Of a DNA stretch of 64,000 nucleotides, positions 32,618 through 45,267 are shown piece after piece; the stretch's first letter is position 1; each line of letters begins with the position of its first letter. The translations under genes were made by a program, and so were the position numbers. The DNA lies in IMG/VR virus record IMGVR_UViG_3300017917_001123, positions 186,001-250,000 of that record; one strand, given 5' to 3'. The notes below the pieces were generated by a model. It worked only from the letters and a program-made list of their open reading frames with translations, searched no databases and was not told the DNA's origin.

Positions 32618-32662
32618 TTGTGGTGTCCTTATGTAGTTGTCTAAGTGTGTATTATACTGCCG

Positions 32663-32884
32663 TTATCGGTAGCTGTCAATCAATTCTTTTACCGAATTGT
32701 CGACTTCGTTGACCTCGTCCAGGAATGCCCAAAGCATCATAGTGATCACAATGCGAGCATCAACGGCGTCTGCTTCGGGGAGTGTGCGGACAAAACGATC
32801 CACATCCTCCCGGGAGCCCATGCCCCAAATCAGATCAGCCAGAATGCGCTGTTTGGCGTTCAGGCCCTCGATCTGGATCATCAT
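32663..32884 (-). CDS. Early hypothetical protein
   Basis: 73 aa, coupled to the upstream gene. Confidence 0.7.
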   Translation of the reverse strand: MMIQIEGLNAKQRILADLIWGMGSREDVDRFVRTLPEADAVDARIVITMMLWAFLDEVNEVDNSVKELIDSYR

Positions 32885-33153
32885 ACTGCCTCCAGCATGT
32901 TAGCTGGCACTCGCCACAGACCCTGTGCGGTACGGACTGTGATGTACTTGATGGCGATCTTTTCCACAGAACCCGTCATGTCCACACCGCGCTTGGTAGA
33001 GTGGAAACGAACGGCCTGCCCAATCTTCAGTGAGCGTTTTACACTCTTCTGGAGGCTAGCACGGGCAAATTTGATGGCATCGATCATGCTTCCCAGTTCA
33101 GTGTCAGTCCAGTTGCCAAACATGATCGCAGAGTTGACTTGCTTGATATCCAT
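32881..33153 (-). CDS. Early hypothetical protein with SH3/KOW-like C-terminus
   Basis: LKIGQAVRF...GSVEKI...WRVPANML. Own promoter and RBS. Confidence 0.75.
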   Translation of the reverse strand: MDIKQVNSAIMFGNWTDTELGSMIDAIKFARASLQKSVKRSLKIGQAVRFHSTKRGVDMTGSVEKIAIKYITVRTAQGLWRVPANMLEAV

Positions 33154-33225
33154 TTGTGAGCTCCTTTGTTTCAGTGTATGTGTGTATTATACGGTCTAGA
33201 ATTGGTTTTGTCAACCAAAGACCCT

Positions 33226-33435
33226 TCAACAATCAGGGTCAAAATCCATCCACTCAGTGAGCTCATCGGGCTGGCCGTCGTCCTCGTATTCGTCTTCGTC
33301 GAGGATGTCGTTGGCACGCATCATATCAGCCACATCGTCTTCACTCATGTAAGCCAGGGCCATCTCTGCGACTGCTTGGGCAGAGATCAAACCTTCGTCC
33401 ATCATCTCAATCAGCTTGTTGGTCTGTGTACGCAT
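33226..33435 (-). CDS. Small very acidic early protein
   Basis: Own promoter and RBS. Ends EWMDFDPDC. Confidence 0.75.
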   Translation of the reverse strand: MRTQTNKLIEMMDEGLISAQAVAEMALAYMSEDDVADMMRANDILDEDEYEDDGQPDELTEWMDFDPDC

Positions 33436-33523
33436 CTTGGGCTCCTTTTGTTTAGTGTATGTGTGTATTATACGGCCAATTTACCAGTTTGTCAACCCCT
33501 TTGACTGTTGTATTTTTGCCACA

Positions 33524-33709
33524 CTAGTCAATCTGTACGTCAATCAGCTTGCCGTCCCTAAAGATGTAGTACTCGTTGATGCGACCGTAATAGGCCCAGA
33601 TACAGCCATTGCCTTCTGTGAGGGTATAGCTGGTGATGCCCTTTTGCTTGAGTTCCTCTGTGACAACCATGACTTCCAGAGGATTGAGCCTAGGATGAAT
33701 GCTGATCAT
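33524..33709 (-). CDS. Early hypothetical protein
   Basis: ATG 33709 follows the upstream stop. Confidence 0.6.
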   Translation of the reverse strand: MISIHPRLNPLEVMVVTEELKQKGITSYTLTEGNGCIWAYYGRINEYYIFRDGKLIDVQID

Positions 33710-33710
33710 A

Positions 33711-33959
33711 TCAACCCCAGTCCTTCTTGTCGCCGTTGCGTTCGTTGTCGTCGTATCCGGCCATGTACTCAGTGACTTCATCCTCAGTCAAGTCAGTGAC
33801 TTCTGGGAAGTTGTAGGTACCGTTGGGGAACCAGTGAGGCTTAGGGCCACGGCCGTAATAGCTGTCGGCACTTCCACGATCGTAGAGGCTACCATGACGA
33901 CCACGATCAAACTGGACGCCCTTAAGGGCACGAACAACCTTTTCCTTTTCGGTAAACAT
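33711..33959 (-). CDS. Early hypothetical protein
   Basis: HGSLYDRGSADSYYGR...EYMAGY. Confidence 0.75.
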   Translation of the reverse strand: MFTEKEKVVRALKGVQFDRGRHGSLYDRGSADSYYGRGPKPHWFPNGTYNFPEVTDLTEDEVTEYMAGYDDNERNGDKKDWG

Positions 33960-34135
33960 TAGATTTCCTCCTTGATCATCAGTGTGCCCATGTACATCAA
34001 CATCAGGCTAGTCACTGCCACGCCAATGCTGGCAATCAGGTGCGATGTTTCGATGCTGTTCTCAACACCACCGACTCCGAAGCCTGCGCCAACCAAGCCA
34101 ACGATAAATGCCACTGCGCCAATCTTTTGTTTCAT
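33959..34135 (-). CDS. Small two-TM membrane protein
   Basis: Two hydrophobic segments. Own promoter and RBS. Confidence 0.7.
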   Translation of the reverse strand: MKQKIGAVAFIVGLVGAGFGVGGVENSIETSHLIASIGVAVTSLMLMYMGTLMIKEEI

Positions 34136-34316
34136 ATTCAGCTCCTGTTTGTTTAGTGTATGTGTGTAGTATAGCTTCAATTTACCACTTTGTCAACCGT
34201 TTTTAGGACCTGTTGTGTAAAAACAACACCCCCTTCGATTCGCTGATAAAGCTCTGCGACTGCCTGTACATAGAAACGCATAATGCGGCCCTTGCTGGTA
34301 ATCAGTGTGTATTCCA

Positions 34317-34493
34317 TCAACGATCCTTCATACGCTTGAACACAGCCATCATCTCTTTGTCATTCTCCAGCTTCTTGCGGAGCTTCTCCCAAGCACGATC
34401 CTCATCCAAGTGTTCGTTGTTCACAGAACGGCCGTTGCTCAGGTCCATGTTCCGCTTGTCCCACTTGGCCTGTTGCTTCTTGGAAATCTTCAT
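34317..34493 (-). CDS. Small early protein
   Basis: Promoter plus AGGAG. Ends VFKRMKDR. Confidence 0.65.
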   Translation of the reverse strand: MKISKKQQAKWDKRNMDLSNGRSVNNEHLDEDRAWEKLRKKLENDKEMMAVFKRMKDR

Positions 34494-34656
34494 TGCTTTG
34501 CTCCTTGCTATGTGTGTATTATACAACCGGTTTTACCAAATGTCAACCAAAAGATCTGTTGTATTTTTGCCACAAAAGGTGAACCCCGCGTACTTCACAG
34601 TAGGCAGGGTTCGGGGGTTGCCCGGGACACTACCCCCGGGACTTTGGAGCGATCGT

Positions 34657-34932
34657 TTAGAGTGTGATGCCCATTGCTTCGGCTTTGTAGCCTAGAGCAA
34701 CGATACGGCGTGATGGGCGACCCAACTCGTATTCAGTAACGGTAACGCCATTGCCTGCTGTGCGTGAGTTCGCATAAACAGCATAACCAGCTTGGCGGAT
34801 ACGGCTTGCTTCTGCGCTGATGTTGCCAATGCCGAAACGCTTCTTGGCTTCGCTTTGCGTCAACTTCTGACCAGCTTGAAGTGCTGTAAACAATTTACCT
34901 GTTTTTGTTTCTGGATTAATTCTCTTTAACAT
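34657..34932 (-). CDS. Winged helix-turn-helix protein
   Basis: KLFTALQAGQKLTQSEAKKRFGIGNISAEASRIRQAGYAV followed by a beta-wing. Confidence 0.7.
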   Translation of the reverse strand: MLKRINPETKTGKLFTALQAGQKLTQSEAKKRFGIGNISAEASRIRQAGYAVYANSRTAGNGVTVTEYELGRPSRRIVALGYKAEAMGITL

Positions 34933-34987
34933 ATTTTTTTCCTCTATATAAAGGCTGACTACTGCCAGCGTTCTACTATTATAGCAC

Positions 34988-35434
34988 CTAGGCCAGGCCT
35001 TGTCTAGCTTTTTGGAGTTTTTCCTCCTGCGCCATTGCCCAAGCCCGATCAAAATTAGGGCTAGAAACTCTATCTGTAAGCCAATTGGTAAATCCATCAA
35101 TCAAAGGCAGGCGCATAGCTATTTCGTCTGACTTCTCCCACCAACTGTAATCAATATCAGGGCCTTCACGGGTAACACCTACTTGGCGCAGACCTGATTG
35201 CTTGAGCAGGACGGTGTGCTTCCATTTGCGTAGGACAACATCCTCAACCTCACGCCAATGACGTAGTGCCCAGGACTCTACTTCATCGCCCCGCTGTTCT
35301 AGCTCAACAATGAGTCCACGAACAGCATCCAGTCTACGACCAAGGGCTTCAATCTCAGCATCTGCTTGAGCCCAGTCCTTATAGAACTGTGGAGTTACAT
35401 ATTCAACTGTTCTTTTTGATCGAAACATTGGCAC
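34988..35434 (-). CDS. Early hypothetical protein (start uncertain)
   Basis: ORF in minus-strand operon. Confidence 0.55.
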   Translation of the reverse strand: MPMFRSKRTVEYVTPQFYKDWAQADAEIEALGRRLDAVRGLIVELEQRGDEVESWALRHWREVEDVVLRKWKHTVLLKQSGLRQVGVTREGPDIDYSWWEKSDEIAMRLPLIDGFTNWLTDRVSSPNFDRAWAMAQEEKLQKARQGLA

Positions 35435-35606
35435 GGAAGAAGGCTCCTAGGATAACCACGGCAAACCAGTTGTAGAGTGTGTAAGGGTCTTGACCAAGCA
35501 CGCCGGGGAAGAGTTGATTGAATGCCCAGATCGTTAGCAAAGGCCCGATAGCAACCACAAGGATGACTAGAGCAACGACACTGGCGATGGTAAACAGACT
35601 TTTCAT
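35403..35606 (-). CDS. Small membrane protein
   Basis: Two hydrophobic helices. GGAG RBS. Confidence 0.7.
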   Translation of the reverse strand: MKSLFTIASVVALVILVVAIGPLLTIWAFNQLFPGVLGQDPYTLYNWFAVVILGAFFRANVSIKKNS

Positions 35607-35642
35607 GTATTCTCCAAGAAAGGGGCACTCTGGCCCCTACTA

Positions 35643-36080
35643 TCACATCAATGCTGGTTCAGCGTTGGCCAAAATGTCCTCGACCTTAGACATTGCTTCT
35701 GCCTCAGACTGAACAGCAGTCTTGACAGAGGCCTGACCAGTCTTGGTCTTAGCCTTAGCTTCCTTCTTAGCAGGAGCCTTAGCCTTAGCCTTAGTTGCCT
35801 TAGCCTTAGGAGCAGCCTTAGCCGGCTTAGCAGTAACGCCACGCTTGTCAGCCGCCGCTTCGAGAGCCGCTTGGACTTCTTTGTTACCGTTGGCAAAGTC
35901 GATGCTCAACAGGAACGCTACAGCGTCTTCCTTAGACATCGGGTGACGCAACTCGACGATGTCAATGTCCTTGTGGCCATTCTTGGCAAGTACTTTGACA
36001 CGCAGGGCATCGTTACAGAAACGAACCTTGAACTCACCATTCAAGCGCGAAACACCAGCATGAGAAAAAACGTTAGACAT
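35643..36080 (-). CDS. Protein with histone-H1-like Lys/Ala tail
   Basis: AKPAKAAPKAKATKAKAKAPAKK encoded by AAGGCT repeats. Confidence 0.75.
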   Translation of the reverse strand: MSNVFSHAGVSRLNGEFKVRFCNDALRVKVLAKNGHKDIDIVELRHPMSKEDAVAFLLSIDFANGNKEVQAALEAAADKRGVTAKPAKAAPKAKATKAKAKAPAKKEAKAKTKTGQASVKTAVQSEAEAMSKVEDILANAEPALM

Positions 36081-36169
36081 AAAATACCTTTCTGTGTGTG
36101 TTTAAAAAGTTAACAGCAATCTCTTACTGTTTTAATAGTATAGCACCAAAATGCCCAAAAGTCAACCCC

Positions 36170-36340
36170 TTAGGCGCCATAGTAAGGGCTGAATTCCTCA
36201 TCGGATTGTGGCTTAAATGCCACATCTTTGAGTTGTTTAACGGTCCAATCCATTGCCGCCGGATTGGGCTCAAATTCCGGCACTCCGTCCTCAGAAACAT
36301 CGTAGTCCGTGTCCTCGGTGATCATTGCGAAACGACTCAT
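36170..36340 (-). CDS. Small acidic protein (56 aa, not in ORF track)
   Basis: Manual translation MSRFAMITEDTDYDVSEDG...PYYGA. ATGA overlap with the upstream gene. Confidence 0.6.
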   Translation of the reverse strand: MSRFAMITEDTDYDVSEDGVPEFEPNPAAMDWTVKQLKDVAFKPQSDEEFSPYYGA

Positions 36341-36525
36341 AGCTCTACCTCCTCATCAATTACTTCAATGTCAGTGATCCGAAACTCACCTGCGTCTGTG
36401 CTGACCCCACAAAACGCATCTCGGAAACTTTGGTTCTCAGCTAGGAAGTTATAGACATCCTGCTTGTCAGTGCCCTCAGGCACTTCAATCTCTTGCCTAA
36501 GGGTTGTGGTTACCATTACCTTCAT
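36337..36525 (-). CDS. Small acidic protein
   Basis: ATGA-coupled 62 aa ORF. Confidence 0.65.
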   Translation of the reverse strand: MKVMVTTTLRQEIEVPEGTDKQDVYNFLAENQSFRDAFCGVSTDAGEFRITDIEVIDEEVEL

Positions 36526-36908
36526 TCGTCTGCCTCCAGTGCTTCGTGTTCAAACGCATCAGTCAGCAAGCCGTTAAACTCGCCGTAGAACTCAACATAC
36601 CACTTGCCGTCTTTGCGGAGGATGTAGTTGTATTCCTCTCCTTGTGCTTCGCGACGGTACTCTGCGAAGTCCTTGTACATACGCTGAGGGCAGTCCTCGC
36701 CACGTTCCTTGTAGAAAGTACAACCGCTAACAGTTTCGTCCAGCGAGCTCATGTCGCCGTTGTCCAACAGCTCGCGGACCAGGAACGGGTCTGTGTAGTG
36801 GTTCTGCAGAATCTTGCCGTTGTGATCCAAGTAGCCGTCCCAGTGGCAGTAAATTTGACCAACAGTACCGTCTGCGTACTCCAGGGCGATAGTAGAACGA
36901 GTTGCCAT
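36522..36908 (-). CDS. Phage early hypothetical protein
   Basis: MATRSTI...IYCHWDGY..HNG motif. Own promoter. Confidence 0.8.
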   Translation of the reverse strand: MATRSTIALEYADGTVGQIYCHWDGYLDHNGKILQNHYTDPFLVRELLDNGDMSSLDETVSGCTFYKERGEDCPQRMYKDFAEYRREAQGEEYNYILRKDGKWYVEFYGEFNGLLTDAFEHEALEADE

Positions 36909-36989
36909 TTATGAGCTCCTTTTGTTTCAGTGTGTATGTATTATATGACCAATTTACCAGTTTGTCAACCAACCCTACAGCCTGTAGGG

Positions 36990-37352
36990 TTATTGTTGCT
37001 CAAAAGCCACAGTAACGTCGACCTCAATGTCCGTAACATCGCCAGCAAGGTCAAACTTCAAGCCGGTAACAGCCGCGCCGTATTGTGCGGCCTTAAGGCG
37101 GCGCTCAACTTCGTGGCGCAGGTCGCCCAGCATATCGTTGAGAAAGTCCTGTGCGCTGTCTTTAACGCCTTTCAGCGTCTCTTGGATGCCGTTGCGGCTC
37201 ATGTCCTCTTGCCCGTCTACGATCATGTCGATAAACGCTTCGGTCTGACCAACGAGGGCTTGCTCAACAATAGCGTCGATCAGCTCGCGCTTTGCCCACA
37301 GGATCTCGCTGGCCTTAAAGGTCTGCTCACGTGCCTTGTAAACAACAGTCAT
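36990..37352 (-). CDS. Early hypothetical protein
   Basis: Own promoter and RBS. Confidence 0.75.
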   Translation of the reverse strand: MTVVYKAREQTFKASEILWAKRELIDAIVEQALVGQTEAFIDMIVDGQEDMSRNGIQETLKGVKDSAQDFLNDMLGDLRHEVERRLKAAQYGAAVTGLKFDLAGDVTDIEVDVTVAFEQQ

Positions 37353-37409
37353 TTCTTGCTCCTTTTCCTAACTGTCTAGCCTATAGTATAACACCGGTTT
37401 TACCACTTG

Positions 37410-37655
37410 TCAACCGATATCTGCAGTAACCCTGTTCTCTGTAGGGTTATAGGTCAGGAACACTTTGCCAAAGGTAGCACCGCGCCCGTCTTCGTCGTGG
37501 TACTCTACTTTGTAGCAAAACTGTCCGCCGTTGGTTATGCCCAGGAACTTGGCACCCTTGAACGCCATCATCTTGTAACCGCAGGAGTCCAAGGTCATAG
37601 CTAAGGTGTGGGTGCTGTAGCTGGTTAGGAGTTTGAGTGTTTCAGCAGTAATCAT
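37410..37655 (-). CDS. Early hypothetical protein
   Basis: ATGA-coupled. Stop lies in the next promoter's TTGACA. Confidence 0.7.
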   Translation of the reverse strand: MITAETLKLLTSYSTHTLAMTLDSCGYKMMAFKGAKFLGITNGGQFCYKVEYHDEDGRGATFGKVFLTYNPTENRVTADIG

Positions 37656-37897
37656 CCCAGCACCACCACTTCTGTGCCCTCAACAACAGGCTCGCCTTCG
37701 TCATCGTAGTCAAAGTCGTCTTGGTCTACGACCTTGTGCATACGGTGGTAGTCGCTGTACTTGACATAGCCTACCTCTACGCTGTCTACAGTAGGAGCCA
37801 CTTGAGTGCGCCAGTGGTCGCCGTAGTTGTATTGGAAGTGGACTTCGGCGTCCGGGTTCTCCATTTGTAGCAGTTCAATGAGCTCGGAAACTTTCAT
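37652..37897 (-). CDS. Small acidic early protein
   Basis: MKVSELIELL...PDAEV N-terminus. Confidence 0.75.
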   Translation of the reverse strand: MKVSELIELLQMENPDAEVHFQYNYGDHWRTQVAPTVDSVEVGYVKYSDYHRMHKVVDQDDFDYDDEGEPVVEGTEVVVLG

Positions 37898-38142
37898 GCT
37901 TGCTCCTTAAAGTAAACGACTTTGATGCGTCCGTTAGTTTGTACGAAAGCACAGTTGTCTTCAAACTGTACATCCGGATGGGCTAGGACCTGCTTAGTAA
38001 ACATTTTAACAGTTCGCACGTTAACGGCACCCTGCCAATCCTCGCGGGCCACGCCCTCATTGTAACTGTACTTGCCGCGGCAACCGCACATGCAACCTAC
38101 TTTGCCCGAATAAACTTTTGCAACTTTGCTGACGTTTAACAT
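37894..38142 (-). CDS. Early protein with CMCGC motif
   Basis: YSGKVGCMCGCRGKY. Own promoter and RBS. Confidence 0.75.
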   Translation of the reverse strand: MLNVSKVAKVYSGKVGCMCGCRGKYSYNEGVAREDWQGAVNVRTVKMFTKQVLAHPDVQFEDNCAFVQTNGRIKVVYFKEQA

Positions 38143-38238
38143 TTCTGCTCCTGCTTGTTTAGTGTATGTGTGTAGTATAACACAAATGGTTTTACCTGTC
38201 AACCCCTTTTATAAAAGCCCTTTCGGGCTGTAGGGTTA

Positions 38239-38388
38239 TTAGGCAGGTACTACTTTAATAAGCATAAAACTGTTTAGGCTGTTAAGTTCCTGATGGAACG
38301 CGGCTACAGCTTGTTTACGTGTGCAAGGGCGTGTTAGGGCTGTATGCACTTGGTTTTTGTAGTAGTAATGTATAACGTATTGTTTCAT
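38239..38388 (-). CDS. 49 aa basic early protein (not in ORF track)
   Basis: Manual translation MKQYVIHYYYKNQVHTALTRPCTRKQAVAAFHQELNSLNSFMLIKVVPA. Own promoter and AGGAG. Confidence 0.7.
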   Translation of the reverse strand: MKQYVIHYYYKNQVHTALTRPCTRKQAVAAFHQELNSLNSFMLIKVVPA

Positions 38389-38438
38389 GGTCGCTCCTTT
38401 AGTGTATGTGTGTAGTATAACACACTTTTACCAAAGTG

Positions 38439-38660
38439 TCAACCCCAAGCGTTATATAACCCTATAGCGCATACGGATATAGCTACAACGTTAACAATGA
38501 ACTGTGGCTTATTTGCCACACGTATAGTCCATGTCAAGTACAGTAGCCCGCCTAGCAAACCAAACAGGGGGTCCAACTTTAGCTCCCTGTAAAAGTTCAT
38601 CAACACGTACATTGCCAAGATGCAGGCAGTGCCTGCCCACTGTAGTACTGTATTAAGCAT
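38439..38660 (-). CDS. Small three-TM membrane protein
   Basis: Hydrophobic. ATG overlaps the upstream stop. Confidence 0.7.
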   Translation of the reverse strand: MLNTVLQWAGTACILAMYVLMNFYRELKLDPLFGLLGGLLYLTWTIRVANKPQFIVNVVAISVCAIGLYNAWG

Positions 38661-38832
38661 TGTCAAATTCCATTACGTCACAACGCAAGTCGTCTACAAT
38701 GTCCTCAATCCTATTGTGCGTCTCATAGCACACGTCACTGTCACCCAGCACCTCTTGTATTAATGCGTCCGCATCCTCTAGCAAATCTATTGCCTCACGC
38801 AGTTTAGCTGCCTTTTGTTTTGCTGTTAACAT
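38653..38832 (-). CDS. 59 aa acidic helical early protein (not in ORF track)
   Basis: Manual translation MLTAKQKAAKLREAIDLLEDADALIQEVLGDSDVCYETHNRIEDIVDDLRCDVMEFDNA. Own promoter and AGGAG. Confidence 0.75.
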   Translation of the reverse strand: MLTAKQKAAKLREAIDLLEDADALIQEVLGDSDVCYETHNRIEDIVDDLRCDVMEFDNA

Positions 38833-38917
38833 GTTCGCTCCTTGTTGTTTAGTGTATGTGTGTAGTATAGCACAGTTTTACCACTTTGTCAACTGTGCTA
38901 TACAATAACCCTATGCT

Positions 38918-39283: not shown

Positions 39284-39382
39284 TTGTTTGCTCCTTGCAG
39301 TGTTTAAGTGTGTAGTATAGCACCAATTTACCACTTTGTCAACTACTACGTAAAAAAACCCTACGCAGGGTAGGGCTATTGT

Positions 39383-39655
39383 TTAAATGTTAGCTATAAC
39401 ACGAACGTATTGGAATCCGGCGCAACGGGTAGCAAAATTGCGTACAGAACCCGAACGCTTTACAGGGTTTTTAATTGTACTACGCAAAAAGTTATACAAT
39501 ACATCGGCGGAACTGGCATTGTTTAAAACAAAAGTAACACTACGACGCGGATTACTAGTGTTTGCTTTTGTTTTAAGCGTACGGTCGGTATATGTACGTA
39601 CATAGTTTACATTTGCTGCACGTGCTACAGCGCGGACTTGTTTAGTGCTTAACAT
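39383..39655 (-). CDS. Basic early protein, 90 aa, glutamate-free
   Basis: Own promoter and AGGAG. Confidence 0.7.
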   Translation of the reverse strand: MLSTKQVRAVARAANVNYVRTYTDRTLKTKANTSNPRRSVTFVLNNASSADVLYNFLRSTIKNPVKRSGSVRNFATRCAGFQYVRVIANI

Positions 39656-39703
39656 ACTTGCTCCTTTAGTGTCTGTGTAGTATAGCACCAATTTACCAGT
39701 TTG

Positions 39704-40228
39704 TCAAGTCTTTTTGTAAAAAATATGCTGTCCAATCTGTTGTATTTTCACAACACTCCTTGACCAAATAGGTTCTTTAATGTAGTCCGCATGATAGAAG
39801 GTACTATGTTCCAACCCTGCTACCCTATAGCCCTCCTGGAGCACCTTGTGAGCAACCTCCTTGCTTTCTGCCCACAAAGGCCCTTTAGGTTGAGCATAGC
39901 GTTTCTTCTTGTCCAATGTCCAGCTGAACTGAGCCCGAGCATAGACAACCTTACATATATCAGTACCCCAGCGTTTCTCCTTTAGTCGATTGAGTGTTAC
40001 CTGTGCGACAGCAAACTTACCTAACCGGTCCTCCACACCGGCTTCATAGAAAATGTTCTTGGCCAAACAGTCTGCTTCAGCAGAAGTATGCTGAACACGC
40101 TGTTGAGTCTTGATCAAATAGATCTTGATCTCTTGTATGTCATCGTGAAGGGTAGAGATCTCCAGTTGCTGGAACGCCAGGATGGCGAACATGGCCACCC
40201 CAGCTAGGATCTTCCATATGCCGTTCAC
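39704..40228 (-). CDS. Cell wall hydrolase (SleB/Hydrolase_2 family)
   Basis: CLAKNIFYEAG, AVAQVTLNR, ICKVVY..AQFSW, IGQHIFY. N-terminal TM segment. Confidence 0.9.
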   Translation of the reverse strand: MNGIWKILAGVAMFAILAFQQLEISTLHDDIQEIKIYLIKTQQRVQHTSAEADCLAKNIFYEAGVEDRLGKFAVAQVTLNRLKEKRWGTDICKVVYARAQFSWTLDKKKRYAQPKGPLWAESKEVAHKVLQEGYRVAGLEHSTFYHADYIKEPIWSRSVVKIQQIGQHIFYKKT

Positions 40229-40851
40229 TTGTGTGGCTCCAAGTTGTTCTTCTCTACACCGTCCTTATACCAGTCGGTGAGTTCCTCGTCCTCTTCGTCC
40301 TCATACTCGGCCATAGACTCGGAGATGCCATACTCATCATCCAGTTCGTCGCCAACGACATCACGCACGGTTTTAGAAGTCTCACCGCCGAACTCAATAC
40401 ACTCGTCACTGCCGTTATACCAACGACCTACATAGGCCATGCCTGGTTCGTAGTAGGTAGCCTCTACTTCAAAGCCGTCATCTACTAGGGCCTCGTAGAT
40501 GCCTACGGGCGGGGCCCACGCAGAGTCAAAGCCGAACTCAATGGTGTTGTTCTCAATCTTTATATCAGGGTCGTAGGCATCAACATCCCACTTGGTGCCC
40601 CAATGATTCACGCAGAAGTCATACCAGTTGGCCACACCATATTTGGCAATGTTCTCGGCACTCCGGCGCTCGAGCTCAATCTGGTCCGGATTCGTTTCGT
40701 CACCAACTCGACCTGCTACAATGTTCAGGTCCTCTGGAATCGGAACCACATGCTTACAGAAGTTGCCTTCCTTAATGGCCTCAACGAGGGCTTCAAGTTT
40801 CTGGGTATCTTCGTGGCTGATTACCACACGGTTGTTGCACCAATTAGGCAT
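40225..40851 (-). CDS. DUF1281/YubB-like ferredoxin-fold protein
   Basis: MPNWCNN, WYDFCVNHWGTKWD, FDSAWAPP, YYEPG motifs. Confidence 0.8.
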   Translation of the reverse strand: MPNWCNNRVVISHEDTQKLEALVEAIKEGNFCKHVVPIPEDLNIVAGRVGDETNPDQIELERRSAENIAKYGVANWYDFCVNHWGTKWDVDAYDPDIKIENNTIEFGFDSAWAPPVGIYEALVDDGFEVEATYYEPGMAYVGRWYNGSDECIEFGGETSKTVRDVVGDELDDEYGISESMAEYEDEEDEELTDWYKDGVEKNNLEPHK

Positions 40852-40861
40852 AGTAGGCTCC

Positions 40862-41125
40862 TTAGTTGAATTCGTAGAAAGTGACGCTAGGATCGATGCT
40901 TTGGAGTTCTTGAGCACAACGGCGCAGGAACTGGGCACGGGCACGGACTTGGCTTGCGGGCAGTTCGCCATCGCAGGTAAGGTTCTCTGGGCTAAGATCC
41001 GCATCCAGCGAATCCGCAATCTTTTGACGGTCCTGGGCGTTGAGCAGGCTGAGCTCCTTGCCGTTGAAAATTTTGGACCAGCTGTTTTTCATTTCAACAT
41101 AGGTTTCCAAGTTCTGAATATTCAT
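40862..41125 (-). CDS. Early hypothetical protein
   Basis: LSPENLTCDGE motif. Own promoter and RBS. Confidence 0.75.
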   Translation of the reverse strand: MNIQNLETYVEMKNSWSKIFNGKELSLLNAQDRQKIADSLDADLSPENLTCDGELPASQVRARAQFLRRCAQELQSIDPSVTFYEFN

Positions 41126-41182
41126 TTTCGCTCCTGTTTCGTTAGTGTCTAGTGTATAGTATAACATCGGTTTTACCGGATG

Positions 41183-41377
41183 TCAACCCCTTTTGGTAAC
41201 TTTTTTAACTAATACGAAAGTACGACCACGCAAATCGAACTTCAAAGGCTTATTGAACACCTTGTGCTCGTTGGTGTCTTTTTTGACATAGGCTAGGCAC
41301 TTGTCCCCGTCTAGGAGGTACAGGTGGTTACAGTCCGACCCGTCCTCCCAAACTGTAGTCTCACGCATCCACTTCAT
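41183..41377 (-). CDS. Early hypothetical protein
   Basis: ETTVW...NHLYLL...FDLRGRTF. Confidence 0.7.
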   Translation of the reverse strand: MKWMRETTVWEDGSDCNHLYLLDGDKCLAYVKKDTNEHKVFNKPLKFDLRGRTFVLVKKVTKRG

Positions 41378-41631
41378 TACATGCTCCAGTAGGCTTCTGA
41401 GCTGGGCGAGCAATAGCGCGGAGTGTCATAGCGTTCCTTATACTCAGCACCGCCCATCAAGTTCTTGCGAGTTACATAAGTTTCGTGGATTTCGCGAATG
41501 TATCCTGGGCGAACTGGGTTGGCTCGCTCCACAGCCGCCAGCGTCATGTCCGCAAAGTCCGTCTTGGACACCAGCTTCATGCCCTCTTTGCATCGCTTGT
41601 CCAACTTATAAATTTCTACGGTATATTCCAT
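41377..41631 (-). CDS. Early hypothetical protein
   Basis: Ends DTPRYCSPSSEAYWSM. Own promoter. Confidence 0.75.
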   Translation of the reverse strand: MEYTVEIYKLDKRCKEGMKLVSKTDFADMTLAAVERANPVRPGYIREIHETYVTRKNLMGGAEYKERYDTPRYCSPSSEAYWSM

Positions 41632-41755
41632 GTCGCTCTCCTTAGTGTCTAGTGTATAGTATAACACAGGTTTTACCACTTGTCAACCAAAAAAAGAGGG
41701 TGTTGCTTTTATACAACACCCCCATAAAGGGCCTGCGTTGCACAGGCCGGAGCAA

Positions 41756-42103
41756 TTAATCCAATCGGCTACCTGCGTAGGCTTCCACGCCCAACATCTG
41801 CTTCAGGAACTCTGCGGCCGCCTCGGCACCCGCTTCCAAAGTGTCCACGTTCTGGACGCCCAAACCACTGGGGTTCCACAGCTGAAGTCCACCACCGTAA
41901 GCAGGACGGAAACCTGCCTCCTTCAGTGCCATACCCAGTTTGGTGTTGCCACGAACCTTGTAGACCGTAACCCAAGCAAAGCCACAGGCGTATTGGTCAC
42001 GTCCGCCCAGCTTCTCCTGGAAGAACTTGGTTGCCGCTTGACGGGCTTCCTGCTTGGCACCCTCAACAAAACTCAGAACCTGCTCTTTAGTGAATCCACT
42101 CAT
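41756..42103 (-). CDS. Early hypothetical protein
   Basis: ACGFAWV...AYAGSRLD. Own promoter. Confidence 0.75.
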   Translation of the reverse strand: MSGFTKEQVLSFVEGAKQEARQAATKFFQEKLGGRDQYACGFAWVTVYKVRGNTKLGMALKEAGFRPAYGGGLQLWNPSGLGVQNVDTLEAGAEAAAEFLKQMLGVEAYAGSRLD

Positions 42104-42160
42104 CTTTCGCTCCTTTAGTTAACTATCTAGCCTATAGTATAGCACCGGTTTTACCTTTTG

Positions 42161-42859
42161 TCAACCGACAATTGGAATAACCCTACGAACGAATCCGGTA
42201 TTGTCCTTCTTAGCACGGCCCTTGGCTTTCAACCCAGCGATAACACCCTTAGGGTCCAAAAAGCGCAGGTCAGTGTCATCAGCATTGAAAACAGGGCGGC
42301 CCATGTAAGCTTCGGGCAGTTTATCAAAGACCATAGCCACGTTCATGCCCTGCGCCACAGCCTTAGCCACGTCCGCATCGTTACCGTCTGCGGCACTGAA
42401 GGTCAAGTGGTAGTTCTTAAGGTGCGACACTTTGCGGCCCAGGACCTTAGTGTAGTCATAGAACTGTACTTCCGGAAACTTCTCAATGATACCGTACTTC
42501 TCCCAGCTCAAGTCCGATGTACCATTCAAGCGGAACACGGGCGTCAAACCCAACTTCGCGGCCTGCTTGATGCCCAGTTTAATGTCTGCTTCCAAGTCCT
42601 TCATGAAAGCATCGCGGTTCTCAAAGAAGTACTTGGTCTTGCGGATGCGAGCCTGCTGGATCACGTTGGTGTTCTCACCTTTGCGGAACATGCCGCCACG
42701 ACCGGCAGTATTAAGGCAAGCGGCTGTACAACCTGCGGTGCGCTTAGGGCATACTTCTTTGCCCGACAAGTCAGCAGGAGCAAGGTGTAGGATGTAGCTC
42801 AGGTAACCCAGCTTCGTACCCTTCTGGATCTTAGGATTTGCAGTGCTCAATAGTTTCAT
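42161..42859 (-). CDS. GP88-family radical-SAM-like protein
   Basis: CPKRTAGCTAAC (Cx6Cx3C), FRLNGTSD, QFYDYTK, YHLTFS motifs. Confidence 0.75.
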   Translation of the reverse strand: MKLLSTANPKIQKGTKLGYLSYILHLAPADLSGKEVCPKRTAGCTAACLNTAGRGGMFRKGENTNVIQQARIRKTKYFFENRDAFMKDLEADIKLGIKQAAKLGLTPVFRLNGTSDLSWEKYGIIEKFPEVQFYDYTKVLGRKVSHLKNYHLTFSAADGNDADVAKAVAQGMNVAMVFDKLPEAYMGRPVFNADDTDLRFLDPKGVIAGLKAKGRAKKDNTGFVRRVIPIVG

Positions 42860-42930
42860 CTCTTGCTCCTTATTAATGTTTCTAGTCTCTAGTATAACAC
42901 CGGTTTTACCACTTGTCAACCAATACCCGT

Positions 42931-43269
42931 TCAATCTCCACGGGTATCTGTATTCAGCATGGGCTTCAACTTGCGGCGGAGTTCCACTTCCAAGTCGTGT
43001 CCTGCCTGCTTGCCACGTGCCGTGCCCAGAACGCGAACACCTATTTCAGTCTTGTCGTTGAGCTCACGCAGGGCCACGCAAAGGAGCCAATTCTTGCTTT
43101 CAGTCTTTGCGCGATAGAAATGCTTGGCTGCACGTGTCCGTGCGCTCTTAAGAGCTGTGGACTCTGTTTTGGCTGTGACACCAACATAAGTCATGCCGTT
43201 GACCGTAAGCTCATAGACTACATGAGTACGATCTGCACGCTTTTTACGGGGACGCTTTTCTAAGTTCAT
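42931..43269 (-). CDS. GIY-YIG-like protein (leaderless start)
   Basis: VVYEL..NGMTYVGVT...R...E...LN. ATG 6 nt after the -10. Confidence 0.6.
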   Translation of the reverse strand: MNLEKRPRKKRADRTHVVYELTVNGMTYVGVTAKTESTALKSARTRAAKHFYRAKTESKNWLLCVALRELNDKTEIGVRVLGTARGKQAGHDLEVELRRKLKPMLNTDTRGD

Positions 43270-43350
43270 GAGTGTAGTATAACACGGTTTTACCACTCTG
43301 TCAACCCCTAAAGAATACCCGAGTGGGCCGTAGGGTTTCAGAAATTCCGG

Positions 43351-43379
43351 TTGACATTCGGTAAAACCTGTGCTATACT
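43351..43379 (+). promoter_or_regulatory. Divergent plus-strand copy of the early promoter
   Basis: TTGACA-ttcGGTAAAacctgtgc-TATACT. Confidence 0.85.
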
Positions 43380-43513
43380 GTAGGCACAATGAGAGATAAG
43401 AAGAAAGCCATAAGGGCACGAGGGTTCGAACAGACTTGCTGGGGATGGACGGCGAGGGCCACCCCCCTATTTGGCTCGGTGATGAAAATATAGTAGGCTG
43501 CTCAAAATAGCCG

Positions 43514-43546
43514 CAAAAAAACCCTAGGCCAAATACCTCCTAGGGT
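43514..43546 (-). terminator. Minus-strand terminator
   Basis: ACCCTAGG-10nt-CCTAGGGT followed by a U run on the minus strand. Confidence 0.8.
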
Positions 43547-43781
43547 CTCCCTGCCCGGGTCTACCGCAACGTGACTCCGAACCGTTTGCGCTCAGTCTAC
43601 TCTAGGCCCAGGGCCTTCGACTCTAGCACAGTGACTTCTGTGGCAATTCACAGCACCTAAGGTCTGTACTGTTACCAGTATTCTTTCACGCTAGGCGTTT
43701 AACCGCATTATCAGTCTAGAGCAATTCCGTCACCTTAGTCATCGGCCGAATTGTTAACTGTTTCGTGTGCTGTTACGGCAC
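43514..43781 (-). ncRNA. Candidate structured non-coding RNA (~265 nt) downstream of tRNA
   Basis: No minus-strand ORF of note. Bounded by a TAAGTA box and a terminator. Multiple 6-7 bp complementary segments. Confidence 0.5.
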
Positions 43782-43802
43782 AAAATACTTAGCTCTGCCC
43801 GG

Positions 43803-43879
43803 TGGTGGGCCCAACAGGACTCGAACCTGTGACCAAGCGATTATGAGTCGCCTGCTCTAACCAACTGAGCTATAGGCCC
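43803..43879 (-). tRNA. tRNA-Ile2 (CAT, lysidine type)
   Basis: GGGCCTATAGCTCAGTTGGTTAGAGCAGGCGACTCATAATCGCTTGGTCACAGGTTCGAGTCCTGTTGGGCCCACCA. Cloverleaf with encoded CCA. Anticodon arm matches E. coli ileX as recalled. Confidence 0.9.
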
Positions 43880-43902
43880 CCGGGATTAATATTATACAGG
43901 AT

Positions 43903-44853
43903 TTACTTCCTTAATCCTAGTGCGGCCTGTAGCTTTTGGGCGGCATTCATAGTATTAGCAGTCTGCCCGTAGGGTGTATATGTTTGTCCCGCACCTGTGC
44001 CGTTGGGTTTTTCTGCTGATCCTAGGGCCTGTGCAGCGGGGTCACCAGTGGCCTGTGCAGCGGGGTTGGGTATGCCCGTGTCTACAAGCGATCTAACCTG
44101 TACACCTTCTGGATCCGCAATGTCTACGAAGGTCCAGTTGCCCAACAGCACAGGATTACCATCTACACGACGATTCCACTTACGCATATAGTACTTGTCT
44201 GCAGCGGGGTTCAGCCCGAGCTGGTCTACAAGGTTAGCAAACACAGAGTCGATCAGGATCATTGTCTCCGCACCTTCTAGAACTCGTAACCAATCGAATA
44301 CGGAATAACCTTCTAGCTCCCGCAACTCAATACATTGTACACCCGGTTCAACAATGGACAGATCAATGTCATAGCTCATATCACTAGCATGACCCTGATA
44401 TACCATATAGCGTTCTTGTGTGACTACACTATTATACAGTGATTTTTCTGCAGCGGGGTCCCGGTCTATACACTCGGCCAACTCCCACTTGTGACTAAAT
44501 GGTACTTCCGCTTGAGCATACTTGTATTGATCGAACTTAAACTGGGCAAAGTGACTCTTATTAGTACGCTCTGGATGACTACTCAAATACTGATACAACC
44601 ACAATTCCTCAGTTACTCCAATAGCGGTCAACTGCTTGTGCGGATTCTCATAAAAGAAAGCGCCATATTCATCTACGGGCACTGACATCCAACGAACCCA
44701 GGGAGCCGCTCGAACCATTTGTTGATAAAAGGGTTCACATACGGGCCAATATACTTCGTAGCCTCTACGTGTATATTCCTTAGCGATAGGTAGAGCAATG
44801 ATGATATCACCAAGTCCTCTACTCTGAATAAAACCAATTCTTTGTTGTGACAT
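43903..44853 (-). CDS. GT9-like glycosyltransferase
   Basis: SRGLGDIIIALP, DWLRVLEGAETMILIDSVFANL motifs. Confidence 0.7.
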   Translation of the reverse strand: MSQQRIGFIQSRGLGDIIIALPIAKEYTRRGYEVYWPVCEPFYQQMVRAAPWVRWMSVPVDEYGAFFYENPHKQLTAIGVTEELWLYQYLSSHPERTNKSHFAQFKFDQYKYAQAEVPFSHKWELAECIDRDPAAEKSLYNSVVTQERYMVYQGHASDMSYDIDLSIVEPGVQCIELRELEGYSVFDWLRVLEGAETMILIDSVFANLVDQLGLNPAADKYYMRKWNRRVDGNPVLLGNWTFVDIADPEGVQVRSLVDTGIPNPAAQATGDPAAQALGSAEKPNGTGAGQTYTPYGQTANTMNAAQKLQAALGLRK

Positions 44854-45083
44854 TTAAAGATCCTTATACGTGTGCAGCGGGGTCCCTACTATTAACATTC
44901 TGTAGGGTTCTGTAGACAATACTTACCACCCCATCCATCTGGCGCACGTATATACTGACGCGGACCATCACGCTCTAAGCAGTAGTCACGACCATAACAA
45001 CCTCGAGTAGTGATACAACCACTCAGTGATACCATAGCAAATATCACGATCAAAGATCTGCATGCATGCAAGAACAGCGGGGT
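44032..45083 (+). repeat. Same-strand dispersed motif TGCAGCGGGGT (5 exact copies, 1 partial)
   Basis: Copies at ~44032, 44056, 44200, 44449, 44873. CAGCGGGGT at 45075. Confidence 0.85.
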
Positions 45084-45098
45084 ATTAGCTTTCAACAT
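44892..45098 (-). CDS. Small putative lipoprotein
   Basis: Hydrophobic stretch plus LSGC lipobox. Confidence 0.55.
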   Translation of the reverse strand: MLKANTPLFLHACRSLIVIFAMVSLSGCITTRGCYGRDYCLERDGPRQYIRAPDGWGGKYCLQNPTEC

Positions 45099-45222
45099 AT
45101 ACTAAGAGATCTCCGTACTGTGACCGAGCTATAACAAGCGCATCATTATATGATTCAGCCAGTACGCCCACTCTAGTAGTGCCCCCGAACTGACTCTTTA
45201 CTGTAGCTGTGTATGTTTTCAT
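45085..45222 (-). CDS. Small early protein
   Basis: 45 aa behind the promoter at 45232-45260. Confidence 0.6.
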   Translation of the reverse strand: MKTYTATVKSQFGGTTRVGVLAESYNDALVIARSQYGDLLVYVES

Positions 45223-45267
45223 AGTGTATATAGTATAGCACCACCGCATGGTTTTGTCAATGATCAA

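What the first reader, a model, noticed from the sequence alone, without database searches (positions are those of the whole stretch)
32651..45260. Array of ~21 near-identical early promoter cassettes, about one per 1-3 small genes
Seen: consensus (G)TTGACA-nnn(G/T)GGTAAA...-TATA(A/C)T-ACACACATACACTAAAC-AGGAGC-ATG with a constant 17 bp spacer and a conserved GGTAAA inside it. Established: T4-type phages have repeated early-promoter/stem-loop (PeSL-like) cassettes that shuffle accessory genes. Inference: a recombinational gene-cassette platform that also sequesters host RNA polymerase. GGTAAA is probably a shared shut-off operator.
Basis: partly seen in the sequence, partly recalled or inferred. 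Interest (0 to 1): 0.65.

Follow-up and report, generated by a model that had tools for sequence, protein, structure and literature searches.

The report
Early promoter cassettes, jumbo phage
A 12.6-kb stretch of an uncultivated 331-kb freshwater phage carries 21 consensus bacterial promoters, each heading one to three small genes; this resembles the early-gene promoter cassettes known from T4-type phages, and in related phages the gene order has broken and rejoined at these cassettes.

Summary
TTGACA-N17-TATA(A/C)T occurs 20 times in the window against 0.01 expected. Eighteen exact copies and two one-mismatch copies lie on the minus strand in 32651-45260, and one lies on the plus strand at 43351. 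Each heads 1-3 small minus-strand genes behind a short A/C-rich leader and an AGGAGC ribosome site.

"Near-identical" overstates it. Outside the hexamers, pairs share 22-32-nt exact runs and about 43% ungapped identity.

The genome is a 331.6-kb phage distantly related to PA5oct and Rak2-type phages. No sigma-70-family or T7-type polymerase gene was detected.

Most of about 100 related environmental contigs carry such arrays. Gene order there is shuffled. In the one close pair, L043 and L075, five of six block edges lie inside promoter cassettes. One difference is a 486-bp single-cassette indel with a chimeric cassette.

So the PeSL-like "shuffling platform" reading is supported at family level. 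PeSL membership is not: only 7-8 of 20 cassettes have a stem-loop.

The spacer box is really T-GGTAAA-ACC in fixed register. It follows the genome, not the gene, and core-gene promoters lack it. A shut-off operator role and polymerase sequestration remain untested. No RNA data exist.

The parts
45232..45260 (-). First promoter of the array. No box, TGn present. The ATG at 45222 leaves almost no leader.
45262..45480 (-). Non-coding head region upstream of the first promoter. It holds phased CCACC/T-tract repeats (45268-45319, period 10-11) and a sequence box shared with relatives.
43803..43879 (-). tRNA-Met inside the array. Relatives also carry tRNA genes as array units.
43351..43379 (+). Divergent promoter with the box, back to back with the promoter at 43304. 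It heads a 34-aa ORF (43389-43493) with almost no leader (ATG about 9 nt after the -10).
43276..43304 (-). Promoter with the box. It drives the leaderless GIY-YIG gene 43269-42931.
42891..42919 (-). Promoter with the box, heading the GP88-family gene 42859-42161.
42136..42164 (-). Promoter with the box, heading gene 42103-41756, which is followed by a terminator hairpin at 41696-41723.
41658..41686 (-). Promoter with the box, heading genes 41631-41377 and 41377-41183.
41158..41186 (-). Promoter with the box and a spacer hairpin. It heads genes 41125-40862, 40851-40225 and 40228-39704 (Hydrolase_2).
39679..39707 (-). Promoter with the TGGTAAATTGG form of the box, heading gene 39655-39383, which is followed by a terminator at 39357-39377.
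39314..39342 (-). Promoter with the box, heading gene 39283-38918.
38864..38892 (-). Promoter with the box and the ACACACATACACTAAAC leader, heading genes 38832-38653 and 38660-38439.
38414..38442 (-). Promoter with the box as the loop of a 7-bp spacer hairpin, heading gene 38388-38239.
38174..38202 (-). Promoter with the box directly after the -35 hexamer, heading genes 38142-37894, 37897-37652 and 37655-37410.
37385..37413 (-). Promoter with the box, sharing a 32-nt exact run with the cassette at 42919. It heads gene 37352-36990, which sits in its own promoter-bounded unit in all relatives that have it.
36940..36968 (-). Promoter with the box, heading genes 36908-36522, 36525-36337 and 36340-36170.
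36137..36165 (-). One-mismatch promoter (TTGACT) with a TTTGGGC-type spacer that is conserved with its operon in relatives. It heads 36080-35643 (Lys/Ala-rich tail), 35606-35403 and 35434-34988.
34978..35006 (-). One-mismatch promoter (TAGACA) without the box, heading the HTH_39 winged-helix gene 34932-34657.
34518..34546 (-). Promoter with the box, heading genes 34493-34317 and 34317-34177.
34168..34196 (-). Promoter with the box and the exact 17-mer leader, heading genes 34135-33959, 33959-33711 and 33709-33524.
33467..33495 (-). Promoter with the box and the exact 17-mer leader, heading gene 33435-33226.
33186..33214 (-). Promoter without the box, heading genes 33153-32881 and 32884-32663.
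32651..32679 (-). Last promoter, without the box. Its spacer has diverged freely among orthologous promoters. It heads the AAA ATPase gene 32617-31748 (homologue in PA5oct and of T4-type nrdC.10).

Best explanation
The region is the early, host-takeover gene block of an uncultivated freshwater jumbo myovirus. Each unit is a strong promoter for the host's primary-sigma RNA polymerase. It has GG-TTGACA, a 17-bp spacer, often a TGn extended -10, and TATAAT or TATACT. A 20-27-nt A/C-rich leader, a strong AGGAGC ribosome site and one to three small genes follow. Host polymerase would fire all units as soon as the DNA enters the cell.

Because the same 55-65-nt unit recurs every 0.2-2.4 kb (12.6 kb / 20 promoters is about 630 bp on average), it also provides short homology. 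Recombination within a genome or between co-infecting relatives then inserts, deletes or swaps whole promoter-plus-gene units. A crossover between the -10 and the ribosome site leaves the resident promoter in front of the incoming gene. This is how PeSL cassettes of T4-type phages are thought to work.

Shown here: the sequence anatomy, the family-wide presence of arrays, shuffled gene order, and junctions inside cassettes in one close pair of relatives.

Inferred: promoter activity, early timing, and that homology rather than mere tolerance of breaks between genes drives the exchange.
For: Anatomy:
- Twenty exact matches against 0.01 expected, all with a 17-bp spacer.
- TGn precedes 13 of the 14 TATACT copies on the minus strand, and the plus-strand one.
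- AGGAGC lies 4-6 nt before the ATG in most units.
- All genes are on the promoter strand.

Transcription strategy:
- No Sigma70_r2, Sigma70_r4 or T7-type RNA polymerase match in the genome.
- The nearest cultured relative by terminase, PA5oct (50% identity), depends on host polymerase and has TTGAC/TATAATA promoters (PMC7318152).
- Phage CBB clusters 11 of its 18 RpoD-like promoters in a block of short early ORFs (PMC5259590).
- Elsewhere in this genome, promoters with the GGTAAA box or its reverse complement (TTTACC at the rIIA promoter) head rIIA (phrog_612, E 9e-133) and a DNA ligase. Their T4 counterparts are prereplicative genes (rIIA: PMC2988021; ligase: my own knowledge).

Family:
- Most related loci hold 10-20 such promoters per 20 kb.

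Exchange:
- Gene order differs between relatives, with promoter-led units as the moving blocks.
- The window is a mosaic by best-hit identity.
- Neighbours stay adjacent in 36% of cases across promoter junctions against 64% across promoter-less junctions.
- For L043 against L075 (93-98% identical), five of six block edges lie in cassettes. One difference is a 486-bp single-unit indel whose chimeric cassette switches between the -10 and the ribosome site.
- Gene 37352-36990 is always a promoter-gene-promoter unit with different neighbours, and its homology starts at 37364-37366 in 13 contigs.
- Contigs of co-occurring relatives in the source pond join the same genes to other leaders (table 5c).
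- Alignment ends fall in cassettes 2.6 times more often than length predicts.
Against: - There is no transcript evidence at all.
- The host is unknown.
- The per-junction test is only a trend: medians 0.19 against 0.74, one-sided p = 0.06, and the loci are related to each other.
- Alignment ends are also enriched twofold at promoter-less gene starts. Part of the signal is therefore simply that breaks between genes survive.
- Some promoter-less junctions are also broken: 1 of 13 and 0 of 15 kept.
- No relative close enough to map recent junctions in this window was found.
- Exact shared runs are only 22-32 nt, which is short for homologous recombination.
- The syntenic region of PA5oct has no dense array.
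Confidence: 0.7

Rival explanations
1. The spacer box T-GGTAAA-ACC is the binding site of a lineage-specific phage protein that switches this class of early promoters off (or on) together. A protein bound between the -35 and -10 would exclude or hold the polymerase.
For: - The box sits in fixed register: offset 3 in 48 distinct promoters of the clade and offset 4 in 37.
- The flanking T and AACC are also nearly invariant, while other spacer positions vary.
- Ninety-nine box-less promoters in the same genomes have almost no information in the spacer.
- Orthologous spacers of the AAA-gene promoter have diverged freely.
- The box follows the genome, not the gene. GP88 and two other orthologues (homologues of 42103-41756 and 41125-40862) carry it only in box-clade genomes.
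- It is enriched about 17-fold in promoter spans and sits at background elsewhere.
- The reverse orientation occurs in relatives.
- Candidate binders are encoded in the array: the HTH_39 gene 34932-34657, which has a box-less promoter, and a Lys/Ala-rich protein at 36080-35643.
- Operators in the spacer are classical, for example lambda OL1 in PL (my own knowledge).
Against: - No binding protein is identified.
- No array protein co-varies cleanly with the box apart from the general clade structure.
- The same pattern can arise if one promoter module keeps being copied.
- T4 early promoters also show extra consensus positions with no known factor (PMC2988021).
- Nothing shows the direction of any effect, whether shut-off or activation.
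Confidence: 0.3
2. The box has no function of its own. It marks one promoter module that spreads and is homogenised by recombination among cassettes. Crossovers downstream of the -10 keep the resident promoter in front of incoming genes.
For: - Crossovers between the -10 and the ribosome site are seen directly in L043 against L075. They are documented for PeSLs (PMC2839356).
- Whole-cassette identities exist, such as the 32-nt exact run between 42919 and 37413.
- Different lineages have different dominant spacers: TTTGGGC/GCCCAAA, CCAAAAGGCC and GGGTTATCCAAAAGGTCG.
- Some genomes mix two types, as expected if modules come and go.
Against: - An invariant 10-nt core with variable flanks looks more like selection on the core than like conversion tracts.
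- The window has no foreign spacer in front of the six genes whose best matches lie in other clades.
- The box occurs in reverse orientation in relatives, which copying does not explain.
Confidence: 0.3
3. The promoters are bystanders in the shuffling. Rearrangements happen anywhere by illegitimate recombination. Only those falling between independently expressed units survive, so junctions look as if they prefer promoters.
For: - Alignment ends are also enriched twofold at promoter-less gene starts.
- Several promoter-less junctions are broken.
- Two close pairs in promoter-poor regions have indels with no promoter nearby: L028 against L029 and L051 against L058.
Against: - In L043 against L075 the switch points lie inside the shared cassette sequence. 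Identity runs up to the switch on one side and from it on the other, producing a chimeric but intact cassette.
- Five of six edges falling in elements that cover about 10% of the sequence is unlikely by chance.
Confidence: 0.25
4. The main purpose of the array is to soak up host RNA polymerase, so that host genes fall silent.
For: The promoters match every known strength element. T4 early promoters are said to out-compete host promoters for this reason (PMC2988021).
Against: - This was not testable here.
- By my own estimate, 21 promoters on 13 kb of a single incoming genome can hold only tens to a few hundred polymerases. A growing cell has several thousand.
- Each promoter has a gene with a strong ribosome site behind it, so expression is the simpler purpose.
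Confidence: 0.1

Closest known systems
PeSL (promoter-early stem-loop) cassettes of T4-type phages RB49/phi1, T4/PST and KVP40/nt-1 (Arbiol et al. 2010, PMC2839356; Comeau et al. 2014, PMC4122927)
   Same: - Strong sigma-70-type promoters are repeated in front of small unknown genes in a variable region.
- A ribosome site and ATG form the 3' end of the unit.
- Differences between close relatives are indels and replacements of whole units.
- Crossovers lie between the -10 and the ribosome site.
   Different: - A stem-loop is present at only 7-8 of 20 units.
- There is no clear AT-rich block upstream of the -35; GG directly precedes it.
- A 10-nt spacer box in fixed register follows the genome.
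- The array is one dense block that is also a GC-rich island.
- The phage is not a T4-type phage in the strict sense.
- Mini-circles were not tested.
T4 early promoters, the 'uber' UP/-35/TGn/-10 promoters (Hinton 2010, PMC2988021)
   Same: - They combine consensus -35, TGn and -10 elements.
- They show extra conserved positions of unknown meaning.
- They head prereplicative genes such as rIIA.
   Different: - T4's are spread over the genome, with about 39 by my recollection.
- They have A/T-rich UP elements.
- No T-GGTAAA-ACC box is known there.
Early regions of PA5oct and Rak2-like jumbo phages such as CBB (PMC7318152, PMC5259590)
   Same: - They are the closest cultured kin: terminase 50% and 43% identical, AAA ATPase 52% identical.
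- PA5oct depends on the host polymerase.
- RpoD-like promoters cluster before short hypothetical ORFs in CBB, and short early genes near a genome end are highly transcribed in PA5oct.
   Different: - Promoter density is far lower: 32 promoters in 287 kb for PA5oct and 18 in 356 kb for CBB.
- PA5oct's syntenic region has only scattered weak matches.
- CBB encodes a sigma factor; none was found here.
Operators inside promoter spacers, for example lambda OL1/OR1 (my own knowledge)
   Same: A conserved short sequence lies between the -35 and -10 of a strong phage promoter.
   Different: No repressor is known here. The box is asymmetric apart from GGT..ACC. There are more than 16 copies per genome.

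Membership tests
PeSL cassettes (T4-type phages) | Strong sigma-70-like early promoter | tested here: met
   Met by sequence only. There are 20 exact TTGACA-N17-TATAMT matches against 0.01 expected, and TGn precedes 13 of 14 TATACT copies. Activity was not tested.
PeSL cassettes (T4-type phages) | Stable stem-loop within or next to the promoter, acting as terminator or attenuator | tested here: not met
   Clear hairpins lie upstream of 6 of 20 promoters (41686, 39342, 38202, 36968, 42919, 43304). Terminator-like sites are not above shuffles (18 against 15.3). Spacer hairpins of -5 kcal/mol or stronger occur in 2 of 20. In the family, inverted repeats of 5 or more occur in 11% against 3% in shuffles.
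PeSL cassettes (T4-type phages) | [quoted passage not shown] | tested here: inconclusive
   Short A or T runs are followed by GG or GGGG in about half of the units. There is no conserved AT-rich block in the column profile. Only the first promoter has a long phased T-tract region.
PeSL cassettes (T4-type phages) | Ribosome site and start codon of a small unknown gene at the 3' end, within a hyperplastic region | tested here: met
   AGGAGC lies 4-6 nt before the ATG in most units. Most products have no Pfam family. Gene content varies widely among relatives.
PeSL cassettes (T4-type phages) | Indels and replacements between close relatives have their junctions in the cassettes | tested here: met
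   Met in the family: L043 against L075, five of six edges, with a 486-bp single-unit indel and a chimeric cassette. For the window, only at roughly 15-nt resolution with 70-80% identical relatives.
PeSL cassettes (T4-type phages) | Circular excision products (mini-circles) | not testable with these tools
   Only contigs of DNA runs were available. Two 'goes back' joints (42167 to 41689 and 39707 to 38837) have 34-35-nt sides and may come from relatives.
Repressor operator in a promoter spacer | Conserved sequence in fixed register between the -35 and -10, beyond what the polymerase needs | tested here: met
   T-GGTAAA-ACC sits at offset 3 or 4. Box-less promoters in the same genomes have uninformative spacers.
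Repressor operator in a promoter spacer | A cognate DNA-binding protein and an effect on transcription | not testable with these tools
   Candidates only: the HTH_39 protein at 34932-34657. No binding or expression data exist.
GIY-YIG nucleases (for gene 43269-42931) | GIY...YIG motif with conserved Arg, Glu and Asn | tested here: met
   In alignment A1, Y19, Y28, G30, R46, E94 and N106 are invariant. PF01541 matches 20 of 27 homologues, best E 2.2e-07, though the window's own copy is below threshold.

The most novel reading that the evidence does not exclude
The 10-nt spacer box is the address label of a lineage-specific phage factor. The factor could be a regulator. Or it could be the stand-alone GIY-YIG nuclease that always sits, leaderless, at the head of the array, and that is 62-82% identical within the box clade but only 30-37% identical outside it.

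The array would then be a self-addressed system. One factor would either co-regulate, or nick and so stimulate exchange at, exactly the promoters that carry its own lineage's box. Different boxes (TGGTAAAACC, TTTGGGC, CCAAAAGGCC) would be promoter dialects that separate co-infecting relatives. The GC3-rich island (0.55 against 0.36) could be a footprint of frequent GC-biased repair there.
Probability: 0.12. Interest if true: 0.75.

Novelty: new variant of a known kind. Interest (0 to 1): 0.42.

Why it matters
Arrays of consensus promoters that double as recombination sites are so far described for T4-type phages only. If this case holds, the same way of building and reshuffling a host-takeover gene set operates in a large, uncultivated family of freshwater jumbo phages.

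The genome-specific spacer box gives a concrete handle on an old open point: what, beyond the polymerase contacts, is written into phage early promoters, and how early transcription is switched off. That question is unsettled even for T4 (PMC2988021).

Practically, the cassettes are a ready set of very strong, compact promoter-leader-ribosome-site units.

Tried and rejected
- **Near-identical phage records.** None found; only the tRNA-Met matched.
- **Rfam.** At gathering and at loose thresholds it gave only the tRNA. The 290-nt non-coding stretch after the tRNA folds no better than shuffles (z = -1.2).
- **Terminator scan.** Not above shuffles.
- **T4 late motif TATAAATA.** Not enriched in the window: 3 against 3.5 expected. 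It could not be used to contrast temporal classes.
- **RNA runs.** None hold the stretch, so start sites could not be tested.
- **Reads laid on 37301-43300.** These were contigs only. The 'goes back' and 'skips' joints have 20-38-nt sides at 88% likeness and are best read as contigs of co-occurring relatives, not as circles or deletions of this phage.
- **Metagenome scan with a rare array gene.** It found relatives of only 57-86% protein identity. None aligns to the array at more than about 80% DNA identity over 100 nt or longer.
- **PA5oct's syntenic region.** It has no dense array.
- **Floating box.** I first thought the box floats 0-5 nt within the spacer and took that as a sign of function. 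Counting showed 91 of 94 at offsets 3-5, so I withdrew that argument.
- **Stem-loop in the spacer as a general rule.** There is only modest enrichment.
- **Paralogues within the array.** None among the promoter-led genes. The only pair is 31055-30792 with 30781-30581, downstream of the last promoter. Recent tandem gene duplication is therefore not the source of the repeats.
- **Not used.** Structure prediction, complex prediction and the large protein searches, because none could decide the open points.

Full report
**1. The observation**

The pattern TTGACA-N17-TATA(A/C)T occurs 20 times in the window. One hundred dinucleotide-preserving shuffles give a mean of 0.01 and never more than one.
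- Eighteen copies lie on the minus strand between 32651 and 45260.
- One lies on the plus strand at 43351, back to back with the minus-strand copy at 43304.
- One unrelated copy lies at 50537.
- Allowing one mismatch adds two minus-strand copies, at 36165 (TTGACT) and 35006 (TAGACA).

Every copy has a 17-bp spacer. In the whole 331,570-bp genome there are 29 exact copies, and 19 of them lie in these 12.6 kb.

The sequence shows GG before the -35, and TGn before 13 of the 14 minus-strand TATACT copies. An A/C-rich leader follows, then AGGAGC 4-6 nt before an ATG. The 20 minus-strand promoters serve 36 called genes.

Two points of the description are too generous. The 17-mer leader is exact in only 4 units and within two mismatches in 6. 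The units as a whole are not near-identical: ungapped identity outside the hexamers averages 0.43, and the longest shared exact runs are 22-32 nt.

**2. What genome this is**

The window is bases 186001-250000 of a virus record estimated to be 93% complete.
- It encodes a tail sheath, a T4-type large terminase, helicases and a radical SAM protein.
- The terminase is 50% identical to that of Pseudomonas phage PA5oct and 43% to Rak2-like phages such as CBB.
- The AAA ATPase at the end of the array is 52% identical to a PA5oct protein and about 40% identical to the T4-type nrdC.10 product.
- No Sigma70_r2, Sigma70_r4 or T7-type polymerase match was found. The T7-type control rang in no genome, so that one blank is weak.
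- The DNA comes from a pond metagenome. Near-identical short fragments occur in freshwater metagenomes of other studies.
- No RNA run holds it.

**3. The genes**

Most products are 45-230 aa and have no family. The exceptions are:
- a GP88-family protein (42859-42161);
- a Hydrolase_2 cell-wall hydrolase (40228-39704);
- an HTH_39 winged-helix protein (34932-34657);
- the AAA ATPase (32617-31748);
- a stand-alone GIY-YIG nuclease (43269-42931).

The nuclease gene begins 6-7 nt after its -10 hexamer, so its messenger has no leader. This arrangement is kept in all clades. Alignment A1 shows the invariant GIY-YIG residues, and PF01541 matches 20 of 27 homologues.

**4. Why "early, host polymerase"**

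This is an inference from four lines.
- The promoters contain every element that the primary sigma factor reads.
- No phage polymerase or sigma factor was found.
- PA5oct is blocked by rifampicin and has TTGAC/TATAATA promoters, with small early genes near a genome end (PMC7318152). CBB has 11 of its 18 RpoD-like promoters in a block of short early ORFs (PMC5259590).
- Outside the array, the same promoter and leader type heads rIIA (phrog_612, E 9e-133; the box is there in reverse orientation, TTTACC), an ATP-dependent DNA ligase and a DUF2201 protein. In T4, rIIA is a prereplicative gene (PMC2988021). I know the ligase gene as an early one.

**5. The array is a family trait**

A scan with the GP88 protein brought 80 related viral contigs. 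A second scan with a rare array gene brought 19 metagenome contigs.
- Most hold 10-20 consensus promoters per 20 kb on the gene strand.
- tRNA genes sit in the arrays as units too.
- The arrays are GC-rich islands. In this genome the four 5-kb windows at 215-235 kb are the only ones at 0.46 GC or above. GC at third codon positions is 0.55 in array genes against 0.36 in other long genes.
- Relatives show the same step between array and flanks.

**6. Shuffling**

Homologues of the window's genes occur in different orders in relatives, and the moving blocks are promoter-led units. For example, GP88 is second in the window but next to the AAA gene in L038 and L083.

By best-hit identity the window is a mosaic. 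The genes at 42859, 42103, 39283, 38832, 38142 and 37897 are closest to one group of contigs. The genes at 40228, 36080-34657, 33781 and 32617-31446 are closest to another.

Over non-redundant loci, neighbours remain adjacent in 53 of 148 cases (36%) where a promoter lies between them, and in 103 of 162 (64%) where none does. Per junction the medians are 0.19 and 0.74. With 8 and 11 junctions the one-sided Mann-Whitney p is 0.06, and the loci are not independent.

The clearest case is a pair of relatives, L043 and L075, that are 93-98% identical in three blocks. I read the junctions directly.
- Homology begins inside a promoter at the left edge.
- L043 has one extra unit of 486 bp, exactly promoter to promoter.
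- L075 carries a chimeric cassette that matches the upstream L043 promoter as far as the start of the leader and the downstream unit from the ribosome site on.
- The second block ends three bases after a shared -10.
- The third block begins at GG-TTGACA.
- The sixth edge fades inside a gene.

The cassettes cover about a tenth of the sequence, so five edges of six in them is not chance. This is the crossover position reported for PeSL mini-circles (PMC2839356).

For the window itself only 70-80% identical DNA was found. Gene 37352-36990 is a promoter-gene-promoter unit in every contig that has it, with four different sets of neighbours. Its homology starts at 37364-37366, just before the ribosome site, in 13 contigs.

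Alignment ends fall in cassettes in 29% of cases against 11% expected. They also fall near promoter-less gene starts in 10% against 5%. In the source pond, contigs of co-occurring relatives join the window's genes at 40852, 42869 and 41125 to other leaders (table 5c).

**7. The spacer box**

GGTAAA is part of a longer element, T-GGTAAA-ACC, or TGGTAAATTGG in a second form. In the window and 13 related contigs it starts 3 or 4 nt after the -35 in 80 of 94 cases and 5 nt after it in 11. The reverse orientation occurs 10 times.

Aligned on the hexamers, the flanking T and AACC are almost as invariant as the hexamers, while the other spacer positions vary. Ninety-nine box-less promoters from the same genomes show almost no information in the spacer.

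The box follows the genome, not the gene. The promoters of GP88 and of two other orthologues carry it in box-clade genomes. Elsewhere they carry unrelated, often palindromic, spacers. Other lineages have other dominant spacers: TTTGGGC/GCCCAAA, CCAAAAGGCC next to the -10, and GGGTTATCCAAAAGGTCG. Some genomes mix two types.

In the window the five box-less promoters are the first one (45260), 33214, and three that head conserved genes: the 36080 operon, the HTH gene and the AAA gene. The orthologous spacers of the AAA promoter have diverged freely, whereas that of the 36080 operon is conserved with its genes.

So the box is not needed for a promoter to exist, and it is maintained. Whether a protein reads it, or one promoter module keeps being copied, cannot be told from sequence. 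Nothing bears on shut-off as such.

**8. Comparison with PeSLs**

By their authors' definition, PeSLs combine four things. These are a strong sigma-70-like promoter, an AT-rich stretch upstream, a stable stem-loop in one of five positions, and the ribosome site and ATG of a small unknown gene. They mediate indels between close relatives and form mini-circles (PMC2839356; PMC4122927).

Here the promoter, the 3' end, the setting and the junction behaviour fit. The stem-loop does not. Six of 20 units have a clear hairpin upstream and two have a stable one in the spacer. Terminator-like sites are not above shuffles. I therefore say it works like a PeSL array but do not file it as one.

**9. Polymerase sequestration**

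This was not tested. By my own estimate, one incoming genome with 21 promoters on 13 kb could engage tens to a few hundred polymerase molecules, a small share of a cell's several thousand. Every promoter has a translatable gene behind it. Expression is the simpler purpose.

**10. Verdict**

The best reading is an early-gene block built of strong promoter-leader-ribosome-site units, which also serve as exchange points. This is a known principle, found here in a new and large family of uncultivated jumbo phages, with three features of its own:
- few stem-loops;
- a genome-specific 10-nt spacer box;
- a GC3-rich island.

The operator and sequestration ideas remain open.

Noticed in passing
window about 30000-46000 (genome 215-235 kb): The array is the only GC-rich island in the 331-kb genome. 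GC is 0.48 against 0.41, and GC at third codon positions is 0.55 against 0.36 in other long genes. Related contigs show the same step between array and flanks. It could reflect host-like codon use for early genes, a shared gene pool, or GC-biased repair at a recombination hot spot.
   Followed up: partly
window 42931-43269 (-): A 112-aa stand-alone GIY-YIG nuclease whose ATG lies 6-7 nt after its -10, so the messenger is leaderless. It is conserved across the family as the first gene after a divergent promoter pair. Identity is 62-82% within the box clade but only 30-37% outside it.
   Followed up: partly
window 43351-43493 (+) and 43418-43460: The plus-strand promoter heads a 34-aa ORF with almost no leader (ATG about 9 nt after the -10), with weak homologues in three relatives (E 1e-6 in a small database). 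A 40-nt element in the same place is 86-92% conserved across several clades. A divergent promoter facing the tRNA is kept in L081, L083 and L038.
   Followed up: partly
window 43515-43802 (-): About 290 nt without an ORF lie between tRNA-Met and a strong terminator hairpin. There is no Rfam match, and the fold is no better than shuffles (z = -1.2). PA5oct has an annotated long non-coding RNA upstream of its homologous AAA gene, but no similarity was tested.
   Followed up: partly
window 45262-45480: The non-coding head of the array has four to five phased CCACC/T-tract repeats (period 10-11) directly upstream of the first promoter. Further upstream is a sequence box (GCCTGTCACCCCCACC..ATCCAAAATTTTTTAGCCTA) shared with L081, L083 and L048, and more loosely with L034. 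It may be curved DNA, an origin, or a genome-end or terminal-repeat boundary.
   Followed up: partly
window 44032-44882 (-): CCCCGCTGCA occurs five times exactly, four of them inside the 316-aa ORF 43903-44853 and one just upstream. Only 2 of 100 shuffles reach five matches at up to one mismatch. The ORF has no family match.
   Followed up: no
genome 329801-329875 (outside the window): ARAGORN calls a tRNA with anticodon CUA, which would read TAG. Nothing in the window requires another genetic code, and none was used.
   Followed up: no
window about 34565-34583, 33513-33531 and 39735-39750 (-): A further repeat, TGTGGCAAAAATACAACAG, lies about 20-40 nt upstream of two promoters. A third, looser copy lies inside the end of the hydrolase gene.
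   Followed up: no
window 41689-42167 and 38837-39707: Contigs of the source sample show 'goes back' joints that would fit a head-to-tail copy or a circle of one promoter-gene-terminator unit (479 bp; depth 84 against about 200). The matching side is only 34-35 nt, and co-occurring relatives could explain the joints.
   Followed up: partly
L040:7211-7963 against L032:10001-10702: The GP88 gene of one relative carries a 51-52-bp in-frame tandem duplication compared with a 99.9% identical contig.
   Followed up: no
L100 and L103 (metagenome contigs): Other lineages have their own repeated spacers: CCAAAAGGCC next to the -10 in L100, and GGGTTATCCAAAAGGTCG in L103, where it is mixed with TGGTAAAACC promoters in one genome.
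   Followed up: partly
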